NCBI RefSeq assembly: GCF_035594765.1
Contig: NC_085842.1
Coordinates: 91,054,782 to 91,118,781 of the forward strand
Direction: 5' to 3'
DNA: 64,000 bases
Source of the DNA: Anolis carolinensis
Lineage: Eukaryota
Within the stretch, counting starts at the first letter, position 1. Each line of letters opens with the position of its first letter. Below the pieces are notes generated by a model, which was not told where the DNA came from, did no database searches, and worked only from the letters and a program-made list of their open reading frames with translations. Of this stretch, positions 3,129 through 40,323 are shown one piece after another. The position numbers and the translations under genes were made by a program.

Positions 3129-4289
3129 CATGTCTATAATCACATTTGATGACAACAAGTCTGTCTCAACAGCTGGCCCTGCTGCACCTTTAATTTGAAT
3201 AAAGAATAGTCACCAGAAGAAGCCAGGATTCAGGTGCTAGTTTTGCCATTTGATTTGGTTGTGTATCTTTCTATTTCTAGTTAAGAATGACATCATACAG
3301 CAGTGCCATTAAGAAAAGGAAATTAAATTCACAGGAATATGTTTAAGTGAAAGAGACACATAAAATCATAAAAGCAGGGAAACTCTGAGGTAGATTTCCC
3401 AAAACCTTTATAACACCAAGCCCAATGTCTCAGTCAAGCTTGCTCCACCCACTTCCATTTTCCATTGCCAATGGGAATAAATGCGGGGGGGGGGGGGAGT
3501 TTAATGAAAAGGAAGCTTTATAAAAAGTAAATCATATTAACAACAACCACAACAAAAATAGCCCCACTGCTTGTATGGTTTCATTTAATGATGTTTAATT
3601 AAGAAAGAAAACTTTCTTTGCATGTGAGATTTGCAAAATATACTCTTTCACTTGATGATGTGTGTGTGAAGTAGATTTTTATGCTCCCCTGTGGACCAAT
3701 TAAAGCCCTATTGCATACAAAGGTGCTTGGTTAAGAACTCGCTGTATCAGTCTTGAGGCTCTATAGTCTTGCTACTGCATACAAAAAATAAACGGCCAGA
3801 TAGGGACATGAACTTTCCTGGCAGATTTAGGGCTGCTTGCCAGAGTTGTCATTTATTATCATTTTTGCTTGCCATGTCTCTTTTTTCAGTGCAGTTTCCA
3901 CAGAGTTTTAAAAATGTTTTCTGAAGGGGAAATGTCAAAAAATAAATGTTAATACTTAGAGATACTAGGACAATTCTATCTTATGTGCTTGAAGAAAAGT
4001 GACTTAACCTGAAGATATAGATTAATCTTCTAGTCTAGTGTTATAGGACCAACGTGCTTCTTACTATCTACAATGAAAGGATGAAGTTTAATGAAATGAA
4101 GTTGAATAAAAATGTATCTTCCATTTCCACATAGCACTGGACACGCTCAAAGCTAGTTTATCCAATGTTCAGGGTTTCTGTGCTTTGAACTCCCAAATAT
4201 CTCGAGGACCATAGCTAGAGGCCAACTGTTCTTTTGTGTATTGTGCATTTAGCACATTTTGTTTTGACACTGTTCATCAGGATGTAAAC

Positions 4290-5005
4290 TGTTCCGTCCC
4301 CCAGGACGATGGTTTGCCTTACCTATTGGTCGTTTGTTTGTTTCCCCTCCTTTACATTTTGTTTGAGCCTCTGGCTGCAAAAGCCTAGGAAAAGTGGCTT
4401 GGAATCTGCAAGAGCTGGCTGCAGTTTTCTTTGCAGTGATTGGTCAAAGAATGCAACATCTTAGGACCGCCCTTTTTACCAGGGTCTAGTCTCCATTTTG
4501 GAGCTTCATTCTGGCTATAGTCTTCCAACGTGCTGGAGCTGTGCAAGGCTAACTGGGACAAATCATCCTCAAAACCAGGCCAATCTAAGCCTATCCAAAT
4601 TAGATAAGTATTGAATTATATTGATCTGGAATAGGAAATCTAGTTAGAGGAGCAGGGTTATTCTGTCGCTTCTAGAACTAATCTTTGCTGTAAAGATAGG
4701 GAAGGAAAGAGTTTCTCCTTCTAATATAGGCAGCGTGATTAGGGTATAGTGGTTTTATAATCACCTTTGCTTTCTGGAACCAGGGATAATTCTGTACCTA
4801 AAACCTATAGAAATTTGTTTCATTTTCTGCAACTTTAAGATCTGTGCCAGGTTTACAACCTTGTATGAATAAACATCCTTTTTTGAAGTTATCCAGACTC
4901 AGTCGTTCAATATCTATAGGACAGCTTATAGGGATTTGCAGTTCGCCCGGATAAAGGACAGCACGTTTCAGTTTTATAGTTTTTTATTGTCCGGCGGACG
5001 GCACA
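4290..5005 (+). repeat. 5' LTR of the BEL/Pao element
   Basis: TGTTCCGTCC...GGACGGCACA imperfect terminal inverted repeats; AATAAA at 4868-4873; differs from the 3' LTR at only 2 positions (4515, 4965) by manual comparison. Confidence 0.97.
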
Positions 5006-5405
5006 GTTTTGAGGTAGATCAGCGGTTTTTCCGCTTGAGCTAGCTTGCACGGCTTATAGTTTTTTATAGTTTAGGAAGTTTAGTTTAGGCCGCGGCTTTT
5101 CCGCCTGAGCTCAGTCTGCATACCTAAAGACTCTACCAGCGTCTGAGGCAGTCAAATAGTGGGGCTCTATTTCCTTGCTATTTGGCTCGCGTGTGCGCAC
5201 GTGGCCCAGTGGCTTTCTGGGTTTGCACAGGCTGTGCAGTTCCCAGCAACGTCCAGGGCTCCCTCGGCGGTAGACCTCGAGCCGCGGAGCACCAGCGACA
5301 GTTCTTTGGCTGGCTCTGAGGCGTGAAGCCCACCAGAACCAGGCTAGAACCTGGACAGGCCTGGCAACGCTGCTGCGAGTTCGGCCGGAGCACTCGGCCG
5401 GCTTC

Positions 5406-5592
5406 GACCTGCCTCATCGTCCTGCGGTGGTGACCTGCCTCATCGTCCTGCGGTGGTGACCTGCCTCATCGCCTGGCGGTGGTGACCTGCCTCATCGTCC
5501 TGCGGTGGTGACCTGCCTCATCGTCCTGCGGTGGTGACCTGCCTCATCGTCCTGCGGTGGTGACCTGCTTCATCGTCCTGCGGTGGTGACCT
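5406..5592 (+). repeat. 26-bp tandem array (7 units plus a partial unit) in the element leader
   Basis: Unit GACCTGCCTCATCGTCCTGCGGTGGT starting at 5406, 5432, 5458, 5484, 5510, 5536, 5562. Confidence 0.95.
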
Positions 5593-5972
5593 CCCTTCAC
5601 AGCGGGGAGGAGGCGTCTTTTCTCTCCTCCTTTCCAAAGCCAGCCTCGGTGCTCCTTCGGCGGCAGGCCTCGAGCCGCAGAGCACGAGGTGCTTGAAAAT
5701 TTGGCGAAGTCGCCATTTTGGCAGTTTACGTCACTCGGGCAAGGGAGGTATCAAGTGGCAAGTTGCTGTCAGTTGGCATTTTGCAGCTTGCCCACTAAAA
5801 TCTGGCGCCAAAGGTCACAATCTTTGTAAAGTATAGTTACTTAGTGATATATATTGCTATGGTTAAGTGTTGTGCATTGTATTATATATTGCATTTGCTT
5901 TTATTGTAAATTTACTTGCTGGTATGTTGTATTTGCTTTTGTTGTAAATTTACTTGCTATTAAGAATACATA

Positions 5973-8900
5973 ATGTCTATGCAATTTCAAGATGATACAG
6001 ATGGTATACCTCCTTCTGAGGCTGAAAGTAGGAATGAAAGGCCCCAAAGGATAAAGCACCCTTCAGCCAAGATGCTAGCCCATCTAATAGATGAAAAGGA
6101 GCTCCTCCATGTGAGGTTAGGTTCGGCATGGGAGCGAATTGTAACATTGATGGACAGAATTGAGAGCTTGGGTATTACAAGGGTGCCATCCATATTACAG
6201 ACCGACCTTGAAGAGACCTTCGGTCTCTGGAGGGGTTTGGTGTCTAAGATAGTCCAGGTCCTCGAGCGCATTAACGCCAAGGATTCAGAGTTAGAAATAG
6301 TGAGTGTCTTAGCTGACACTAATGAGAAAGAAAATAAGGTGAGGGCAATTCTAGATGCCTTGGAATTTAGTTCTCCACCTGTTAATCTAAGGTCTGAGCC
6401 AAAAGGAAATCAGTCTTCCTTATGCAGCCATGAGACCAATCTTTTAAAATCACCTGCTGTGGCACTTAGTCTTAAGTCCAACCGCTCTAGCCAGGTATCT
6501 AAACTAAGGGAGTGTGCATCATCTAAACATAGCCACTCTAGCAAGTCTTCTGCTGCTGGGAGTGCCATCTCTTCCCTAGCTGCCTTGCACATTAAGGAGG
6601 CTGCACGTCTGGAGCTAAAGAGCAAGGTAGCGGGGGCGGAGGCTGATGCTAAGGCAGCTGATCTCACCCTTCCCTTTAAAGAAGAAGAGCAACGACTGCA
6701 AAGCAAAATGCAAATAGAACAGGCCCAAAGGCAATGTGAAATAGAAATGCTTAGAATAAAGATGGATGCCGCAGCCAAAAGGGTAAGGGCTGAGACTTTG
6801 GCCAAGGCCCTAATTGAGCCACTCACAGAAGAAAATGTAAGTCAGTTGCCGAAGCAGGACCCTTCTTCCAAGGTGCTTGTGCATCTTAATAGCTTAAACA
6901 GCCAGTTTTCGGATGAGGAACAGGAAGACTTCTCTCCTTACCCAGAGCAGGGCCCCAAAGTCACTTTTGAGTTTCCTGCAGAGCAGAGCGTCATAGCGGG
7001 GAGCTCACCCTTGCCCGAGCTACCTGTGCCTCCTGCTAAATCCCTAGGTCAGTCAATCAGGGCCTCAAGGCCAAGTGCTAGTTGGCCCTTACAGACAGCT
7101 GCACAGGGAGCCACCGATTCGTCAGTGGTCGATGTCATCCCTCCAAGAGGCCAAAGGTTGACGCAAGGTGCACGGTGGGAGTCCACTCCACAACAGCAAA
7201 CTCCTCAATTGTTCCCTTCGACGCCAGAGTCCCAGCTTGTCTCCATCATCAGAAGCCCCAGAAGAGATCTTAAGGACAAGGGTGTCGAAAAGTTTTCGGA
7301 CAAGCCTGAGGAATTTCTTCTCTGGAAGGCCACCTTCCAGAGAGCAATCAGAGACTTAAAGTTATTGCCTGAGGAAGAACTGACTCTTCTGGCTGCATGG
7401 TTGGGCCCAGCCTCATCCTCACAAGTTAAGAAGATCTACGCAGCCCACGTAGCCGATCCCGACAAAGCCCTGGAAAAGGCCTGGGCCAGGTTGCAGCAGA
7501 GGTATGGGGCCAGCACAGAGATTGAAGCATCTCTTATGGACAAGCTCCAAAGGTTCCCAGCTTTGAAACTCAAAGACTTCAAACTCTTGTGGGACCTCAG
7601 CGATCTCCTTACGGAATTAGAGTCGGCCAAGGAGAATCCAGAACTGCCCGGTTTGAAGTGCCTCGATCAGCACCTGTCCCAGAGGCAGATCTTGACCAAG
7701 CTGCCCTTCACTTTGCAAGAACGCTGGGGACAGGAGGTCTTCAACTACAAGGAGGCCCACTCCCAGGCATACCCTCCATTTTCTCATTTGGTCCAGTTCA
7801 TCACCAGGGCGGCCAGAGAAAGGAATGATCCGCAGACGGGCCTCCCCACCTTATACCAAGGGACCCATCCAGGGAAGGCATCTGAAGTGGACAAGAAACC
7901 ACCTAGAGAGGCCAATAGACCTGTCAGCGTAAAGGCAGTCGAAACTCAACACAAGACTGATGAACCCAGGTCGGAGGTAAAAGAGGTGCTCTGCCCCATT
8001 CACCAAAAGCCTCACAGTTTGGCCAACTGCCGGGAATTTGGCAAGAAGCCTTATAAAGAAAGACAACAGATTGTACAGAAGCTGGGCATATGTTTTAGGT
8101 GCTGTGGAGCAACTCTTCACTTTGCATCCAACTGCAAAGAGGACGTCAAATGCGCAAGGTGTAACAGCCTTAAGCATTGCACCGCGATGCACAACTCTGA
8201 CGCTGTCTCCCGCGCCAAAGGGGACACGTCTTCCAAAGAAGGGTCATCTACTGAAGCCACCAACATGCAGACCGCGTCACGGATGCAGGAGGATGCCCCA
8301 TCGGTCACCTGTACTGAACTATGCTCTGACGTGCACCAGTTCAGAGTCTGCCATCCCATCTGCCTAGCAGATGTATATCCAGCCAGAAGACCTTGGCTTA
8401 AAAAGAGACTTTACGTGGCTTTGGATTCACAAAGCGACGCCTCCCTGGCGACTCCAGAGTTTTTCCAACTGTTTGACATAAAAACCCAGACGGTCGACTA
8501 CACCATGTCCACCTGTGTAGGGAAGAAGAAGTTGCAGGGTCGCATAGCATCCGGCTTTGTTGTCTCCTCTTGTGACCAGAAGAGACTGTTCGAGTTACCA
8601 GACCTCATTGAGTGTTCCTCTATCCCTCGGAACAAAAAACAAATTGTAACTAGAGAAGTTGTGGAGGCTCATCCACATTTGCGACGATTAAAGAATGCCA
8701 TACCTGCTTTCCGTCCAGATGTGGACATTGCCCTTCTGCTTGGTGCGGACTGTCCGAACTTGTTCTATGTGAACGACCAAGTTAAGGGACCTCCAGGGGC
8801 GCCCATTGCTCAGCTGCTACCACTAGGCTGGACAGTTACAGGCCCAGTGTGCATAAACAAGATGCACCCACCATCGTCGTTGGACTCCAATCAAGCACAG

Positions 8901-10622
8901 GTGCTTAAAGGTGGACGTCCTACACTTGTGCGCAGTTGCCTAAGTCACATCTCAGTCTACTGCCAAGCAATAACTCCAGAGTATTCCTCCATTTTCAAAG
9001 TCTCTGAGAGAGACGAAGCCACAGCGCTCTCGAAAGATGAGCAAAGGTTTTCGGACATTATGAATGCTCAAGTCTCACGAAGTGCAGAGGTGAAAGCCTG
9101 CAAATCAACCACAGAAATCAAGATGGGCCAAAGATCTTGCCTGGAACCACACCGTTTTGAACGTTTTTCGGAGTGGCACAGTCTTCTTAGAGCAGTAGCT
9201 AGGCTTATACATCGTTTAGCTTGCAAAGATAGTGAGCCTTTACAGGTCCAGGATATGATAAAGGCTAAGAGCGTCATATTCAAGTCAGTGCAGAGATCTG
9301 CTTTCAAGCAGGAAATAGCTAGGCTAGAGCAAGGGCTCAACATCCCTAATCAAAGTCTTCTAAATGAGTTAAACCCATTTCTAGACAAGGAGGGTATTTT
9401 GAGAGTTGGAGGAAGGTTAGCCAAAGCTAAACTCAAGGCGTGCATAAAAAACCCCATCATCATACCCCCTAATAGTCACACTGCATTGCTGCTCGTTCGG
9501 CATCACCATGAAAGGATCCATCATCAGGGTAGAACTCTAACTGAGGCAGCCCTTAGAAATGAAGGTCTGTGGGTAGTTAATGCCAAAAGGTTGGTCAACA
9601 GTTGTATTTTCAAATGTGTCAAATGTCGGCGACTCAGACGAAACTGTCAAAGTCAGTTGATGGCAGAACTACCTCAGGATAGGACTTTGACAGACCCACC
9701 CTTTTCCCATGTGGGAATCGATGTGTTTGGTCCTTGGGAGGTTGTCACTAGGAAAACCAGGGGTGGTGTTGTAAATAACAAGAGGTGGGCAGTTTTGTTT
9801 ACTTGTTTAGTAATACGAGCTGTCCATATAGAAGTCATAGAAGGGATGGACACTTCATCATTTTTAAACGCATTAAAAAGGTTCATAGCCCTCAGAGGGC
9901 CAATTAAGTCAATTCGGTCGGACTGTGGCACCAATTTTGTAGGTGCGACCAAAGAACTCAATTGTGTGTCTAGGTTTGGGAGAGACCCAAAGGTTCAGAA
10001 CTTTACAAATACTGAACAAATTATGTGGACTTTCAATGTTCCTCACGCCTCCCATATGGGTGGTGTTTGGGAGAGGATGATTGGTATTAGTCGCAAAATC
10101 CTTAATGCCATGTTTTTGAGTCATAGGTCATTGACGCATGATGTTTTGGTGACACTTATGGCGGAAGTTACCGCAATTATCAACAACCGGCCGCTGGTTC
10201 CCCTTACCAGTGACCCTGAGAACTTACAACCACTGACTCCTGCACTTATTTTGACACAAAAGGTGCCAGGATGGAAGGACGTCATGTTGCCAGTTCCGGA
10301 CGGAACTCACCGTGCCCTGTGGAAACAGGTGCAGTCCTTGGCCAACCACTTTTGGAAAAGGTGGAAAGCTGAGTACTTAAGCCAGCTTCAAGCTAGAAGA
10401 ATCTGGCAAAGCCCACAGGACAACATTGAGGTTAACAACGTTGTGTTGTTAAAGGACAAAGACTTGCCCCGCCATGCGTGGCCCATGGGCATTGTATTAA
10501 AGACCTTTCCTTGCCCGGACGGTAAGGTCAGGAAAGTTCAATTAAAGACTTGCAACAGAGGCAAAGTGTCCATTTTGGACAGACCAATTAGTGACCTCGT
10601 GTTGCTTATTGGAGATGTTTAA
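5973..10622 (+). CDS. BEL/Pao Gag-protease-integrase polyprotein (1549 aa) lacking RT and RNase H
   Basis: Coiled-coil/capsid Gag; three Zn knuckles (CPIHQKPHSLANC, CFRCCGATLHFASNC, CARCNSLKHCTAMH); aspartic protease-like LDSQS and PLGWTVTGP; integrase HHCC (HERIHH...CVKC) and D-D-E (GIDVFGP, RSDCGTNF, GGVWERM); C-terminal FWKRWKAEYL. No YxDD or FSDAS-type motif. Confidence 0.93.
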   Translation: MSMQFQDDTDGIPPSEAESRNERPQRIKHPSAKMLAHLIDEKELLHVRLGSAWERIVTLMDRIESLGITRVPSILQTDLEETFGLWRGLVSKIVQVLERINAKDSELEIVSVLADTNEKENKVRAILDALEFSSPPVNLRSEPKGNQSSLCSHETNLLKSPAVALSLKSNRSSQVSKLRECASSKHSHSSKSSAAGSAISSLAALHIKEAARLELKSKVAGAEADAKAADLTLPFKEEEQRLQSKMQIEQAQRQCEIEMLRIKMDAAAKRVRAETLAKALIEPLTEENVSQLPKQDPSSKVLVHLNSLNSQFSDEEQEDFSPYPEQGPKVTFEFPAEQSVIAGSSPLPELPVPPAKSLGQSIRASRPSASWPLQTAAQGATDSSVVDVIPPRGQRLTQGARWESTPQQQTPQLFPSTPESQLVSIIRSPRRDLKDKGVEKFSDKPEEFLLWKATFQRAIRDLKLLPEEELTLLAAWLGPASSSQVKKIYAAHVADPDKALEKAWARLQQRYGASTEIEASLMDKLQRFPALKLKDFKLLWDLSDLLTELESAKENPELPGLKCLDQHLSQRQILTKLPFTLQERWGQEVFNYKEAHSQAYPPFSHLVQFITRAARERNDPQTGLPTLYQGTHPGKASEVDKKPPREANRPVSVKAVETQHKTDEPRSEVKEVLCPIHQKPHSLANCREFGKKPYKERQQIVQKLGICFRCCGATLHFASNCKEDVKCARCNSLKHCTAMHNSDAVSRAKGDTSSKEGSSTEATNMQTASRMQEDAPSVTCTELCSDVHQFRVCHPICLADVYPARRPWLKKRLYVALDSQSDASLATPEFFQLFDIKTQTVDYTMSTCVGKKKLQGRIASGFVVSSCDQKRLFELPDLIECSSIPRNKKQIVTREVVEAHPHLRRLKNAIPAFRPDVDIALLLGADCPNLFYVNDQVKGPPGAPIAQLLPLGWTVTGPVCINKMHPPSSLDSNQAQVLKGGRPTLVRSCLSHISVYCQAITPEYSSIFKVSERDEATALSKDEQRFSDIMNAQVSRSAEVKACKSTTEIKMGQRSCLEPHRFERFSEWHSLLRAVARLIHRLACKDSEPLQVQDMIKAKSVIFKSVQRSAFKQEIARLEQGLNIPNQSLLNELNPFLDKEGILRVGGRLAKAKLKACIKNPIIIPPNSHTALLLVRHHHERIHHQGRTLTEAALRNEGLWVVNAKRLVNSCIFKCVKCRRLRRNCQSQLMAELPQDRTLTDPPFSHVGIDVFGPWEVVTRKTRGGVVNNKRWAVLFTCLVIRAVHIEVIEGMDTSSFLNALKRFIALRGPIKSIRSDCGTNFVGATKELNCVSRFGRDPKVQNFTNTEQIMWTFNVPHASHMGGVWERMIGISRKILNAMFLSHRSLTHDVLVTLMAEVTAIINNRPLVPLTSDPENLQPLTPALILTQKVPGWKDVMLPVPDGTHRALWKQVQSLANHFWKRWKAEYLSQLQARRIWQSPQDNIEVNNVVLLKDKDLPRHAWPMGIVLKTFPCPDGKVRKVQLKTCNRGKVSILDRPISDLVLLIGDV

Positions 10623-10700
10623 AGTTCTAGTGTTTGTATTGTTGTGTATACAAAGGTGTTTGTATGTTTTTGATTGGTAAATTCCCACATCCTGGGAATT

Positions 10701-10710
10701 TAGCGGGGAG
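10701..10710 (+). other. Polypurine tract (plus-strand priming site)
   Basis: tagcggggag immediately 5' of the 3' LTR. Confidence 0.7.
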
Positions 10711-11426
10711 TGTTCCGTCCCCCAGGACGATGGTTTGCCTTACCTATTGGTCGTTTGTTTGTTTCCCCTCCTTTACATTTTGTTTGAGCCTCTGGCTGCA
10801 AAAGCCTAGGAAAAGTGGCTTGGAATCTGCAAGAGCTGGCTGCAGTTTTCTTTGCAGTGATTGGTCAAAGAATGCAACATCTTAGGACCGCCCTTTTTAC
10901 CAGGGTCTAGTCTCCATTTTGGAGCTTCATTCTGGGTATAGTCTTCCAACGTGCTGGAGCTGTGCAAGGCTAACTGGGACAAATCATCCTCAAAACCAGG
11001 CCAATCTAAGCCTATCCAAATTAGATAAGTATTGAATTATATTGATCTGGAATAGGAAATCTAGTTAGAGGAGCAGGGTTATTCTGTCGCTTCTAGAACT
11101 AATCTTTGCTGTAAAGATAGGGAAGGAAAGAGTTTCTCCTTCTAATATAGGCAGCGTGATTAGGGTATAGTGGTTTTATAATCACCTTTGCTTTCTGGAA
11201 CCAGGGATAATTCTGTACCTAAAACCTATAGAAATTTGTTTCATTTTCTGCAACTTTAAGATCTGTGCCAGGTTTACAACCTTGTATGAATAAACATCCT
11301 TTTTTGAAGTTATCCAGACTCAGTCGTTCAATATCTATAGGACAGCTTATAGGGATTTGCAGTTCGCCCGGATAAAGGACAGCACATTTCAGTTTTATAG
11401 TTTTTTATTGTCCGGCGGACGGCACA
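10711..11426 (+). repeat. 3' LTR of the BEL/Pao element
   Basis: 714/716 identical to 4290-5005 by manual comparison; followed by TSD TAAAC. Confidence 0.97.
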
Positions 11427-11800
11427 TAAACACTGGCTTAATTTGCAAGTTTGATTGCTGAAGCACATTAGCGCTCCCTTTGTGAAAGGAAAAGAAATAC
11501 ACATCTAATTTGACTTTCAATAATAGTGAAATTTGTAATGATTCTGCTTTGAGGACAATAAGACACTCAACATATGCTCATAGGGAACCCATTTCTCTTT
11601 ACAATTATTCCCCATTATGTTTAATAAAATGTTGCCTGACATGAAGAAGATGGGATGCCATTGTCTGCCATCGGTGCTTAAGTTGGGAAACTGCTTCTTT
11701 CCTTCCTTTTCTTGAGTAGACTGGAAGCTGTGTACCTCATTCATTTGTCTTCCAGCCCAAGAAAGTATATAGATCCACACATGTTTATGGTTAAAAAGAG

Positions 11801-17841: not shown

Positions 17842-17992
17842 NNNNNNNNNNNNNNNNNNNNNNNNNNNNNNNNNNNNNNNNNNNNNNNNNNNNNNNNNNN
17901 NNNNNNNNNNNNNNNNNNNNNNNNNNNNNNNNNNNNNNNNNNNNNNNNNNNNNNNNNNNNNNNNNNNNNNNNNNNNNNNNNNNNNNNNNNNN
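17842..17992. other. Assembly gap (N run)
   Basis: Seen directly. Confidence 1.
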
Positions 17993-40039: not shown

Positions 40040-40323
40040 NNNNNNNNNNNNNNNNNNNNNNNNNNNNNNNNNNNNNNNNNNNNNNNNNNNNNNNNNNNNN
40101 NNNNNNNNNNNNNNNNNNNNNNNNNNNNNNNNNNNNNNNNNNNNNNNNNNNNNNNNNNNNNNNNNNNNNNNNNNNNNNNNNNNNNNNNNNNNNNNNNNNN
40201 NNNNNNNNNNNNNNNNNNNNNNNNNNNNNNNNNNNNNNNNNNNNNNNNNNNNNNNNNNNNNNNNNNNNNNNNNNNNNNNNNNNNNNNNNNNNNNNNNNNN
40301 NNNNNNNNNNNNNNNNNNNNNNN
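40040..40323. other. Assembly gap (N run)
   Basis: Seen directly. Confidence 1.

What the first reader, a model, noticed from the sequence alone, without database searches (positions are those of the whole stretch)
5973..10622. BEL/Pao element with RT and RNase H missing in frame, while Gag-protease-integrase stays fully open
Seen: one stop-free 1549-aa ORF. After the protease region (...LSKDEQRFSDIMNAQVSRS, nt ~9083) it runs straight into AEVK...HRFERFSEWHSLLRAVARL and the integrase. Established: BEL/Pao polyproteins have the order Gag-PR-RT-RH-IN. These two peptides normally bracket several hundred residues of RT (YVDD) and RNase H (FSDAS-like), and none of that is present. The LTRs, TSD, PPT, Zn knuckles and integrase D-D-E are intact, and the LTRs are ~99.7% identical. 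Inference: this may be a propagating 'semi-autonomous' lineage that builds its own particle and integrates itself but borrows RT/RH from a helper, or that acts as a defective-interfering partner. The deletion covers just the RT-RH module and keeps the frame, which hints at selection. However, a random deletion is in frame one time in three.
Basis: partly seen in the sequence, partly recalled or inferred. Interest (0 to 1): 0.85.

Follow-up and report, generated by a model that had tools for sequence, protein, structure and literature searches.

The report
RT-less jumping-gene lineage in green anole
This is one young copy of a lizard BEL/Pao retrotransposon lineage that has lost its reverse transcriptase and RNase H but still spreads, keeping its coat, protease and integrase genes under selection, so it must borrow the copying enzyme from elsewhere.

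Summary
Window 4290-11426 is a 7137-bp BEL/Pao element of Anolis carolinensis. It has 716-bp LTRs (2 mismatches), a TAAAC target duplication and one 1549-codon ORF reading Gag, protease-like domain, integrase. About 560 residues of RT and RNase H are missing.

It is not a one-off. Six other genomic copies carry the same junction, each with its own 5-bp target duplication and 0-2 LTR mismatches.

Four sister copies carry smaller deletions at the same site. All of them preserve the frame and all remove the RT core.

Coding sequence is under purifying selection (dN/dS about 0.1-0.25). This holds inside the clade that shares the junction: integrase N-part has 12 synonymous against 3 non-synonymous changes.

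The integrase matches the published consensus of family "NC-1" (397 copies, the largest BEL/Pao family found in animals). That family's published RT consensus continues exactly from the RT stub left in sister copies. RT-bearing relatives therefore exist or existed and are the likeliest helper. I found no intact one.

A sub-lineage that also lacks the integrase core still transposes, so integrase can act in trans too.

Other first-stage readers of this scan flagged further RT-less BEL copies elsewhere in this genome.

The closest analogue is the mouse IAP I-delta-1 element.

The parts
4285..4289 (+). left copy of the 5-bp target-site duplication (TAAAC)
   Evidence: the flanks read ...GTAAAC|TGTTCC and GGCACA|TAAAC...
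4290..5005 (+). 5' LTR, 716 bp, TG..CA
   Evidence: 714/716 identical to the 3' LTR (mismatches at offsets 225 and 675)
5006..5972 (+). leader (primer-binding position and untranslated region), with two 87-nt direct repeats at 5406-5492 and 5510-5596
   Evidence: no ORF of 100 aa or more
5973..10622 (+). single ORF of 1549 codons: Gag, protease-like domain, integrase, without RT or RNase H
5973..7292 (+). Gag N-terminal extension (aa 1-440), seen only in the Anolis lineages, with a variable 33-nt repeat near 6698-6740
   Evidence: dN/dS 0.23-0.9
7293..7616 (+). Gag core (DUF1759 match, aa 441-548)
   Evidence: E 5.9e-5, just under the Pfam cut-off; Gag 441-800 has dN/dS 0.07-0.31
7992..8192 (+). 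Cys/His-rich nucleocapsid-like region with a CX2CX5HX4C knuckle at aa 707
   Evidence: the cysteines and histidines are invariant in alignment A2
8304..8927 (+). protease-like domain (aa 778-985); the active-site position reads L-D-S-Q-S (aa 817-821, nt 8421-8435) where full-length relatives have L-D-D-Q-S
   Evidence: AlphaFold model pLDDT 81.5; almost all top Foldseek hits are retroviral proteases, e.g. HTLV-1 2b7f_A, prob 1.0, E 0.007; dN/dS 0.10-0.23
9084..9092 (+). deletion junction (..SRSAE|VKACK..); exact cut ambiguous within the shared CAGAGG
   Evidence: bridged by contigs of runs X5, X19 and X9
9507..9626 (+). integrase H-H-C-C zinc-binding region (aa 1179-1218)
9720..10073 (+). integrase catalytic core, D1250 to E1367 (D, D, E present)
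   Evidence: matches residue for residue the part of the published NC-1 integrase consensus shown
10320..10607 (+). DUF5641, the C-terminal domain typical of BEL/Pao integrases (aa 1450-1545)
   Evidence: E 1.4e-25
10694..10710 (+). polypurine tract next to the 3' LTR
10711..11426 (+). 3' LTR
11427..11431 (+). right copy of the target-site duplication (TAAAC)

Best explanation
The element is a recent insertion of a non-autonomous but still protein-coding branch of the Anolis carolinensis BEL/Pao family published as NC-1 (Sinbad superfamily).

Shown: RT and RNase H were removed by a series of frame-preserving internal deletions. The result is a fused Gag, protease-like, integrase polyprotein.

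Shown: these RT-less genomes keep being reverse-transcribed and integrated. Every copy has an almost identical LTR pair, which reverse transcription regenerates, and its own 5-bp target duplication.

Inferred: the polymerase must therefore come in trans. The likeliest source is RT-bearing members of the same family that are packaged in the same particles. The mosaic, recombinant make-up of the copies fits co-packaging with template switching.

Shown and inferred: Gag, protease and integrase are under purifying selection within the RT-less clade. The inference is that the element's own proteins raise its own transmission, for example by packaging their own RNA in cis and matching their own LTR ends, as in mouse IAP I-delta-1.

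Shown: integrase is not strictly needed in cis, because an integrase-core-deleted sub-lineage also spreads.
For: Identity and host: protein relatives at 88-95% identity occur only in A. carolinensis.

Propagation: 11 DNA copies were examined (window, L001-L009, L012). All have 715-718-bp LTR pairs with 0-2 mismatches and 11 different 5-bp target duplications, while LTRs differ by up to 4.2% between copies. Seven copies share the window's junction to the base.

Deletion variants: variants B (L005), C (L009), D (L001) and E (L008) keep 76-213 more codons, but all lack the RT core. Their deletions differ by 36, 294, 411 and 639 nt, all multiples of three.

Selection: dN/dS is 0.15-0.27 overall. 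Inside the A-type, integrase-intact clade, the integrase N-part has 12 synonymous against 3 non-synonymous differences (pN/pS 0.07, p = 3e-6). In the sub-lineage whose integrase core is deleted the count is 31 against 29 (pN/pS 0.27).

Recombination: synonymous divergence between the window and L001 changes from 0.013 to 0.43 between adjacent segments.

Helper: the published NC-1 integrase consensus matches the window residue for residue over the part shown. The NC-1 RT consensus starts with the same 44 residues as the RT stub of L001 and runs on through YVDD (PMC3118150).

Activity in populations: BEL insertions are often private to single anoles (PMC7561263).
Against: No intact RT-bearing copy was found. 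Three protein searches, covering lengths of 275-3115 aa and including the RT stub as query, returned no Anolis protein with an RT closer than 61% identity, and that one (P0005) is itself RT-deleted. All 27 annotated Anolis proteins of the three related lineages lack RT.

Copies were sampled through annotated proteins, which favours long ORFs. A copy broken at the junction would still encode about 1040 aa and would have been caught.

Because of recombination, part of the purifying-selection signal may have been acquired in RT-bearing ancestors.

Transcription is not proven. The runs that look like RNA are only guessed to be RNA.
Confidence: 0.78

Rival explanations
1. The RT-less copies are pure passengers. 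Their ORF is open only because they are young and keep recombining with full-length elements, and their own proteins contribute nothing to their spread.
For: Strong mosaicism. The integrase N-part is nearly identical in all integrase-intact copies (dS 0.065 or less) while Gag-protease differs by dS 0.17-0.94, as if one module were repeatedly re-acquired. An integrase-core-deleted sub-lineage still transposes.
Against: Within the clade that shares the junction, the tightly linked integrase N-part shows 12 synonymous against 3 non-synonymous changes. The integrase-dead sub-lineage shows relaxation, 31 against 29. All RT/RNase H-site deletions preserve the frame. The same pattern arose independently in lineages B and C.
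Confidence: 0.12
2. It acts as a defective-interfering or hyper-parasitic element. The RT-less polyprotein co-assembles with the helper and lowers the helper's own transposition. This would explain why intact RT-bearing copies are rare.
For: RT-less copies dominate among young and annotated copies: 11 of 11 DNA copies and 27 of 27 annotated proteins. No intact helper was found.
Against: Nothing measured here addresses interference. The reading is compatible with, and not exclusive of, the best explanation.
Confidence: 0.2
3. There is no cognate helper any more, and the lineage uses an RT from a different retroelement family.
For: No intact RT-bearing relative in any search. Three diverged Anolis BEL lineages are all RT-less. 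Other readers of this scan note a tRNA-independent, self-complementary primer site, which would lower the need for a matched RT (unchecked).
Against: A published RT consensus exists for this very family, built from at least two genomic copies. RT normally enters particles as part of a matching Gag-Pol.
Confidence: 0.08
4. A single dead copy with a chance in-frame deletion, or an assembly artefact.
For: A random deletion is in frame one time in three.
Against: Seven loci carry the identical junction with different target duplications. Contigs from three independent runs bridge the junction.
Confidence: 0.01

Closest known systems
BEL/Pao family NC-1 of Anolis carolinensis (de la Chaux and Wagner 2011, PMC3118150)
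   Same: The integrase sequence matches the published consensus residue for residue over the part shown. The RT stub in sister copies equals the start of the published RT consensus. The family was reported as the highest-copy BEL/Pao family in 62 metazoan genomes, with 397 elements.
   Different: That survey accepted elements with any one domain and does not mention non-autonomous or deleted members; 'non-autonomous' and 'deleted' occur 0 times in its text. Every young copy examined here lacks RT and RNase H.
Mouse IAP I-delta-1 elements (reviewed in PMC6466679)
   Same: An internal deletion yields one fused ORF. The element is non-autonomous and needs proteins in trans, yet causes most new insertions. 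Its fusion protein helps in cis. This is the same logic as proposed here.
   Different: IAP is an endogenous retrovirus and its 1.9-kb deletion removes parts of gag and pol. Here a BEL/Pao element loses only RT and RNase H and keeps Gag, protease and integrase. There are several nested deletion variants. The cis effect is inferred from selection and has not been measured.
Plant TR-GAG elements and the barley BARE-2/BARE-1 pair (discussed in PMC13570524)
   Same: These are partly coding, 'semi-autonomous' LTR retrotransposons that depend on an autonomous partner.
   Different: TR-GAG elements keep only Gag (plus protease in some). BARE-2 lacks Gag. None is described as keeping Gag, protease and integrase while losing just RT and RNase H, and they are Copia or Gypsy elements of plants.
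LARD and TRIM elements; ETn/MusD
   Same: Non-autonomous LTR elements mobilised in trans.
   Different: They have no, or no selected, coding capacity. Here a 1549-codon ORF is under purifying selection.

Membership tests
BEL/Pao LTR retrotransposon (family NC-1, Sinbad superfamily) | LTRs ending TG..CA and flanked by a short target duplication | tested here: met
   716-bp LTRs, 5-bp duplication, in all 11 copies
BEL/Pao LTR retrotransposon (family NC-1, Sinbad superfamily) | Gag of DUF1759 type, and an integrase with H-H-C-C, D-D-E and a C-terminal DUF5641 | tested here: met
   DUF5641 E 1.4e-25; DUF1759 and rve fall just under the Pfam cut-offs
BEL/Pao LTR retrotransposon (family NC-1, Sinbad superfamily) | retropepsin-like protease between Gag and RT | tested here: inconclusive
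   The region is homologous to that of full-length relatives, and the model matches retroviral proteases weakly (E 0.007). The motif is D-S-Q, not D-S/T-G; relatives have D-D-Q. Activity is untested.
BEL/Pao LTR retrotransposon (family NC-1, Sinbad superfamily) | reverse transcriptase and RNase H in the polyprotein | tested here: not met
   absent from this copy and from all 10 sisters. It is therefore a deletion derivative of the family, not an autonomous member.
BEL/Pao LTR retrotransposon (family NC-1, Sinbad superfamily) | sequence identity to the published family | tested here: met
   the integrase consensus matches residue for residue over the stretch shown (compared by eye)
Partly coding non-autonomous LTR retrotransposon (IAP I-delta-1-like) | lacks an essential replication enzyme yet has several independent recent insertions | tested here: met
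Partly coding non-autonomous LTR retrotransposon (IAP I-delta-1-like) | an autonomous partner with related LTRs and sequence is present in the same genome | tested here: inconclusive
   A published RT/RNase H consensus of the same family exists, but no intact RT-bearing copy was found.
Partly coding non-autonomous LTR retrotransposon (IAP I-delta-1-like) | the retained ORF is functional and selected | tested here: met
   (dN/dS 0.1-0.25; 12 synonymous against 3 non-synonymous changes within the junction-sharing clade)
Partly coding non-autonomous LTR retrotransposon (IAP I-delta-1-like) | mobilisation in trans and a cis effect of the fusion protein | not testable with these tools
   needs a bench assay
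TR-GAG | retains only a Gag ORF | tested here: not met
   integrase and a protease-like domain are retained
LARD / TRIM | no coding capacity | tested here: not met
   1549-codon ORF

The most novel reading that the evidence does not exclude
RT-less Gag-protease-integrase genomes, not full-length elements, are the main replicating form of the most abundant BEL/Pao family known in animals. They are kept going by very few RT-bearing copies, or by heterologous ones. The same state evolved independently in three diverged anole lineages. Some trimming steps may have arisen by reverse transcription of spliced RNA: two deleted segments, of 294 and 228 nt, are bounded by GT..AG.
Probability: 0.2. Interest if true: 0.7.

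Novelty: new variant of a known kind. Interest (0 to 1): 0.5.

Why it matters
Deletion derivatives that outcompete their autonomous parents are well documented for a mouse endogenous retrovirus and for plant Copia and Gypsy elements. They have not been documented for BEL/Pao elements, nor for this architecture, in which only the polymerase module is lost and the particle, protease and integration genes stay under selection.

The case offers a natural dissection of which retroelement functions must match the genome in cis (Gag, protease, largely integrase) and which can be shared (RT and RNase H). It may also explain why the anole holds the largest BEL/Pao family known.

For annotation, the roughly 27 'uncharacterized protein LOC...' gene models of the anole found here are transposon polyproteins. 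Some predicted introns in those models coincide with natural deletion variants.

Tried and rejected
- **Helper search.** Three protein searches found no RT-bearing close relative. The queries were the whole ORF, the RT/RNase H stub of L001, and a 501-aa piece chosen to catch short fragments. This says nothing about unannotated DNA.
- **Copy number from reads.** All runs were Logan contigs, whose summed depths are not copy numbers, so I made no estimate.
- **Expression.** Runs X1, X5 and X19 cover the element but not the unique flank at 11516-11712, which would fit RNA. Their RNA status is only a guess, so I claim no transcription.
- **Age of the deletion from divergence between junction-sharing copies.** I weakened this argument after finding recombination close to the junction. 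L006, L007 and L012 carry a different integrase haplotype from about 80 nt to the right of it.
- **Splicing as a general origin of the deletions.** Only two of the steps can be drawn with GT..AG ends. Variants B and E cannot. Microhomology (AAGGT, CAGAGGTG) fits template switching equally well.
- **Domesticated host gene.** Rejected: the sequence is multi-copy, with LTRs and target duplications.
- **A hidden RT elsewhere in the element or window.** Rejected by tblastn and the ORF list.
- **Literature.** Searches for an RT-less BEL/Pao description found none.
- **Handling of sequences.** The published domain consensus was only read and compared by eye.

Full report
**What is at the coordinates.** The window holds a complete LTR retrotransposon at 4290-11426 (7137 bp).
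- The two LTRs are 716 bp long, begin TG and end CA, and differ at 2 positions.
- They are flanked by the 5-bp duplication TAAAC, and a 17-nt purine tract abuts the 3' LTR.
- One ORF of 1549 codons runs from 5973 to 10622.
- Pfam sees DUF1759 (Gag), the integrase zinc-binding and core domains, and DUF5641. It sees no RVT_1 and no Peptidase_A17.
- A 750-residue RT-RNase H probe cut from a full-length zebrafish relative matches the 64-kb window only with its first 114 and last 38 residues. About 567 residues have no counterpart.
- In a multiple alignment with seven full-length relatives from fish, frog, tick, abalone and starfish, the ORF aligns up to the end of the protease-like region and resumes in the linker before the integrase.

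The one exception is that DUF1758, which it expected, is not detected. Full-length relatives of this branch do not match DUF1758 either.

**Whose element it is.** Close protein relatives (88-95% identity over the whole length) occur only in Anolis carolinensis. The integrase matches, residue for residue over the stretch shown, the consensus published for family NC-1 of de la Chaux and Wagner 2011. That family has 397 copies, is assigned to the Sinbad superfamily, and was the largest BEL/Pao family in their survey of metazoan genomes (PMC3118150). The survey accepted elements with any one retroelement domain and does not mention deleted members.

**It is a propagating lineage, not a single dead copy.** I fetched ten further genomic copies through their annotated proteins (L001-L009, L012).
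- All have LTR pairs of 715-718 bp with 0-2 mismatches.
- All eleven copies, the window included, have different 5-bp target duplications.
- LTRs differ by up to 4.2% between copies. Near-identity within each pair against clear divergence between copies is what reverse transcription produces, so each copy is a separate, recent retrotransposition.
- Seven copies (window, L002, L003, L004, L006, L007, L012) have the window's junction to the base.
- Contigs from three unrelated public runs also bridge the junction.
- A population study found many BEL insertions private to single anoles, that is, ongoing activity (PMC7561263).

**A series of frame-preserving deletions.** Four sister copies keep more sequence at the same site.
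- Variant D (L001, 1780-codon ORF) keeps about 110 residues of the RT N-terminus and about 100 residues from the end of RNase H onwards. It lacks the whole RT core and the front of RNase H.
- Variant E (L008) is D minus 36 nt. Variant C (L009) is D minus 294 nt. Variant B (L005) is D minus 411 nt. Variant A, the window's form, is D minus 639 nt.
- Every difference is a multiple of three. The breakpoints sit in short direct repeats: AAGGT for C, and CAGAGGTG for A relative to B.
- L012 is exactly variant B without a 228-nt segment.
- The 294-nt and 228-nt segments can be drawn with GT..AG ends, and the NCBI gene models of L001, L008 and L005 treat them as introns. These two steps may therefore stem from spliced RNA. 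Template switching at microhomology explains them equally well, and variants B and E have no such ends.
- Two other anole lineages, about 45% identical in Gag, have their own frame-preserving RT/RNase H deletions. Lineage B shares one junction in all seven annotated proteins that cover the site (L011). Lineage C is L010.
- Sampling went through annotated proteins and so favours long ORFs. However, a copy broken at this site would still encode about 1040 residues, would lie inside the search's length range, and would have been found. Copies with frame-breaking lesions further downstream were indeed found.

**Selection.** Nei-Gojobori dN/dS between copies is 0.15-0.27 over the whole ORF, about 0.1-0.2 in the protease-like part and 0.06-0.24 in the integrase.
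- The copies are strongly mosaic. Between the window and L001, dS is 0.013, 0.067, 0.43 and 0.045 in four successive segments. Gag-protease differs by dS 0.17-0.94 between copies whose integrase N-parts are almost identical.
- This is the signature of recombination between co-packaged RNAs. It also means that some of the constraint could date from RT-bearing ancestors.
- The cleanest test uses only the four A-type copies with intact integrase, which share the junction and the adjoining haplotype. Their integrase N-part carries 12 synonymous and 3 non-synonymous differences (pN/pS 0.07, p = 3e-6). The last 100 codons before the junction carry 10 and 3.
- Three copies (L006, L007, L012) share a 386-nt deletion that removes the second catalytic Asp and the Glu of the integrase. 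In these the remaining integrase N-part shows 31 synonymous against 29 non-synonymous differences (pN/pS 0.27), while their Gag-protease stays at 0.05-0.11.
- So integrase is constrained where it is intact and less so where it is broken. The broken sub-lineage still made three independent young insertions, so integrase can be supplied in trans.

**Protease.** The segment between Gag and the junction is homologous to the same segment of full-length relatives. The conserved motif is L-D-D-Q-S in those relatives and L-D-S-Q-S here, not the classical D-S/T-G. An AlphaFold model (pLDDT 81.5) has retroviral proteases as nearly all of its best Foldseek matches, though only at E about 0.007-0.03. I call it protease-like; its activity is untested.

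**Where the RT comes from.**
- Three searches of the large protein collection found no RT-bearing close relative. The nearest RT-region match is 61% identical and belongs to P0005, which is itself RT-deleted. Other matches are about 40% identical and come from fish and invertebrates.
- All 27 annotated anole proteins of the three lineages lack RT.
- The published NC-1 RT consensus begins with the same 44 residues as the stub in L001 and continues through YVDD. The published 'protease' consensus, which is really the Peptidase_A17 region, that is, the RT connection and RNase H, ends where the L001 stub resumes.
- So RT-bearing members of this family were present in the first anole assembly, in at least two copies by the paper's rules. 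They are the most economical helper. Whether any is intact today is open.

**Comparison with known systems.** The closest analogue is the mouse IAP I-delta-1 element. It also has an internal deletion giving a fused ORF, depends on proteins in trans, causes most new insertions, and has a fusion protein that acts in cis (PMC6466679). Plant TR-GAG and BARE-2 elements are the other partly coding non-autonomous LTR elements (PMC13570524). This case differs in four ways:
- the superfamily is BEL/Pao;
- the polymerase module is lost precisely while Gag, protease and integrase are retained;
- the deletions form a stepwise, frame-preserving series;
- the loss recurs in three lineages.

I found no description of this in the searched literature.

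**Other notes of this scan.** Other first-stage readers flagged further RT-less BEL copies elsewhere in this genome, and a possible self-priming site in this very element. I used these only as leads. None describes an RT-bearing copy.

**Limits.**
- There was no genome-wide DNA search, no raw reads and no confirmed RNA data.
- dN/dS was computed pairwise on a recombining family.
- The comparison with the published consensus was made by eye from the paper's supplement.

Noticed in passing
L006, L007, L012 (deletion corresponding to window 9940-10325): A shared 386-nt deletion removes the integrase second Asp and the Glu. L007 has a further 1-nt deletion about 85 nt downstream that restores the frame, so its DUF5641 tail is read again.
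   Followed up: partly
L011:5001-9125 and L010:5001-9464: Two other anole BEL/Pao lineages, about 45% identical in Gag, have their own frame-preserving RT/RNase H deletions. All seven annotated lineage-B proteins that cover the site share one junction (..EEQ|WHYISTSENPAD..).
   Followed up: partly
L001:6001-11343, L008:4001-9307, L005:4001-8701: NCBI gene models (P0002, P0127, P0003) splice out 294-nt or 228-nt segments of continuous ORFs. These 'introns' equal the natural deletion variants C and A and have GT..AG ends.
   Followed up: partly
window 8421-8435 and alignment A3: In this BEL/Pao branch the protease active-site position reads D-D-Q-S (D-S-Q-S here) instead of D-S/T-G. It is conserved from molluscs to frogs.
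   Followed up: partly
P0006 (Danio) aa 990-1341; supplement of PMC3118150: Pfam 'Peptidase_A17' matches the stretch after RVT_1, that is, the RT connection and RNase H with its DAS motif, not a protease. The published 'NC-1_protease' consensus is that region too.
   Followed up: no
window 6698-6740: A 33-nt repeat (peptide QIEQARRQSEM-like) in the Gag N-terminal extension varies in copy number between copies.
   Followed up: no
window 5406-5492 and 5510-5596: Two 87-nt direct repeats (94% identical) lie in the 967-nt leader between the 5' LTR and the ORF.
   Followed up: no
window 11386: The 3' LTR has A where the 5' LTR and all laid contigs of four runs have G. This is probably a mutation that arose after insertion.
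   Followed up: no
window 17842-17992 and 40040-40323: Runs of N (assembly gaps or masked sequence); left untouched.
   Followed up: no
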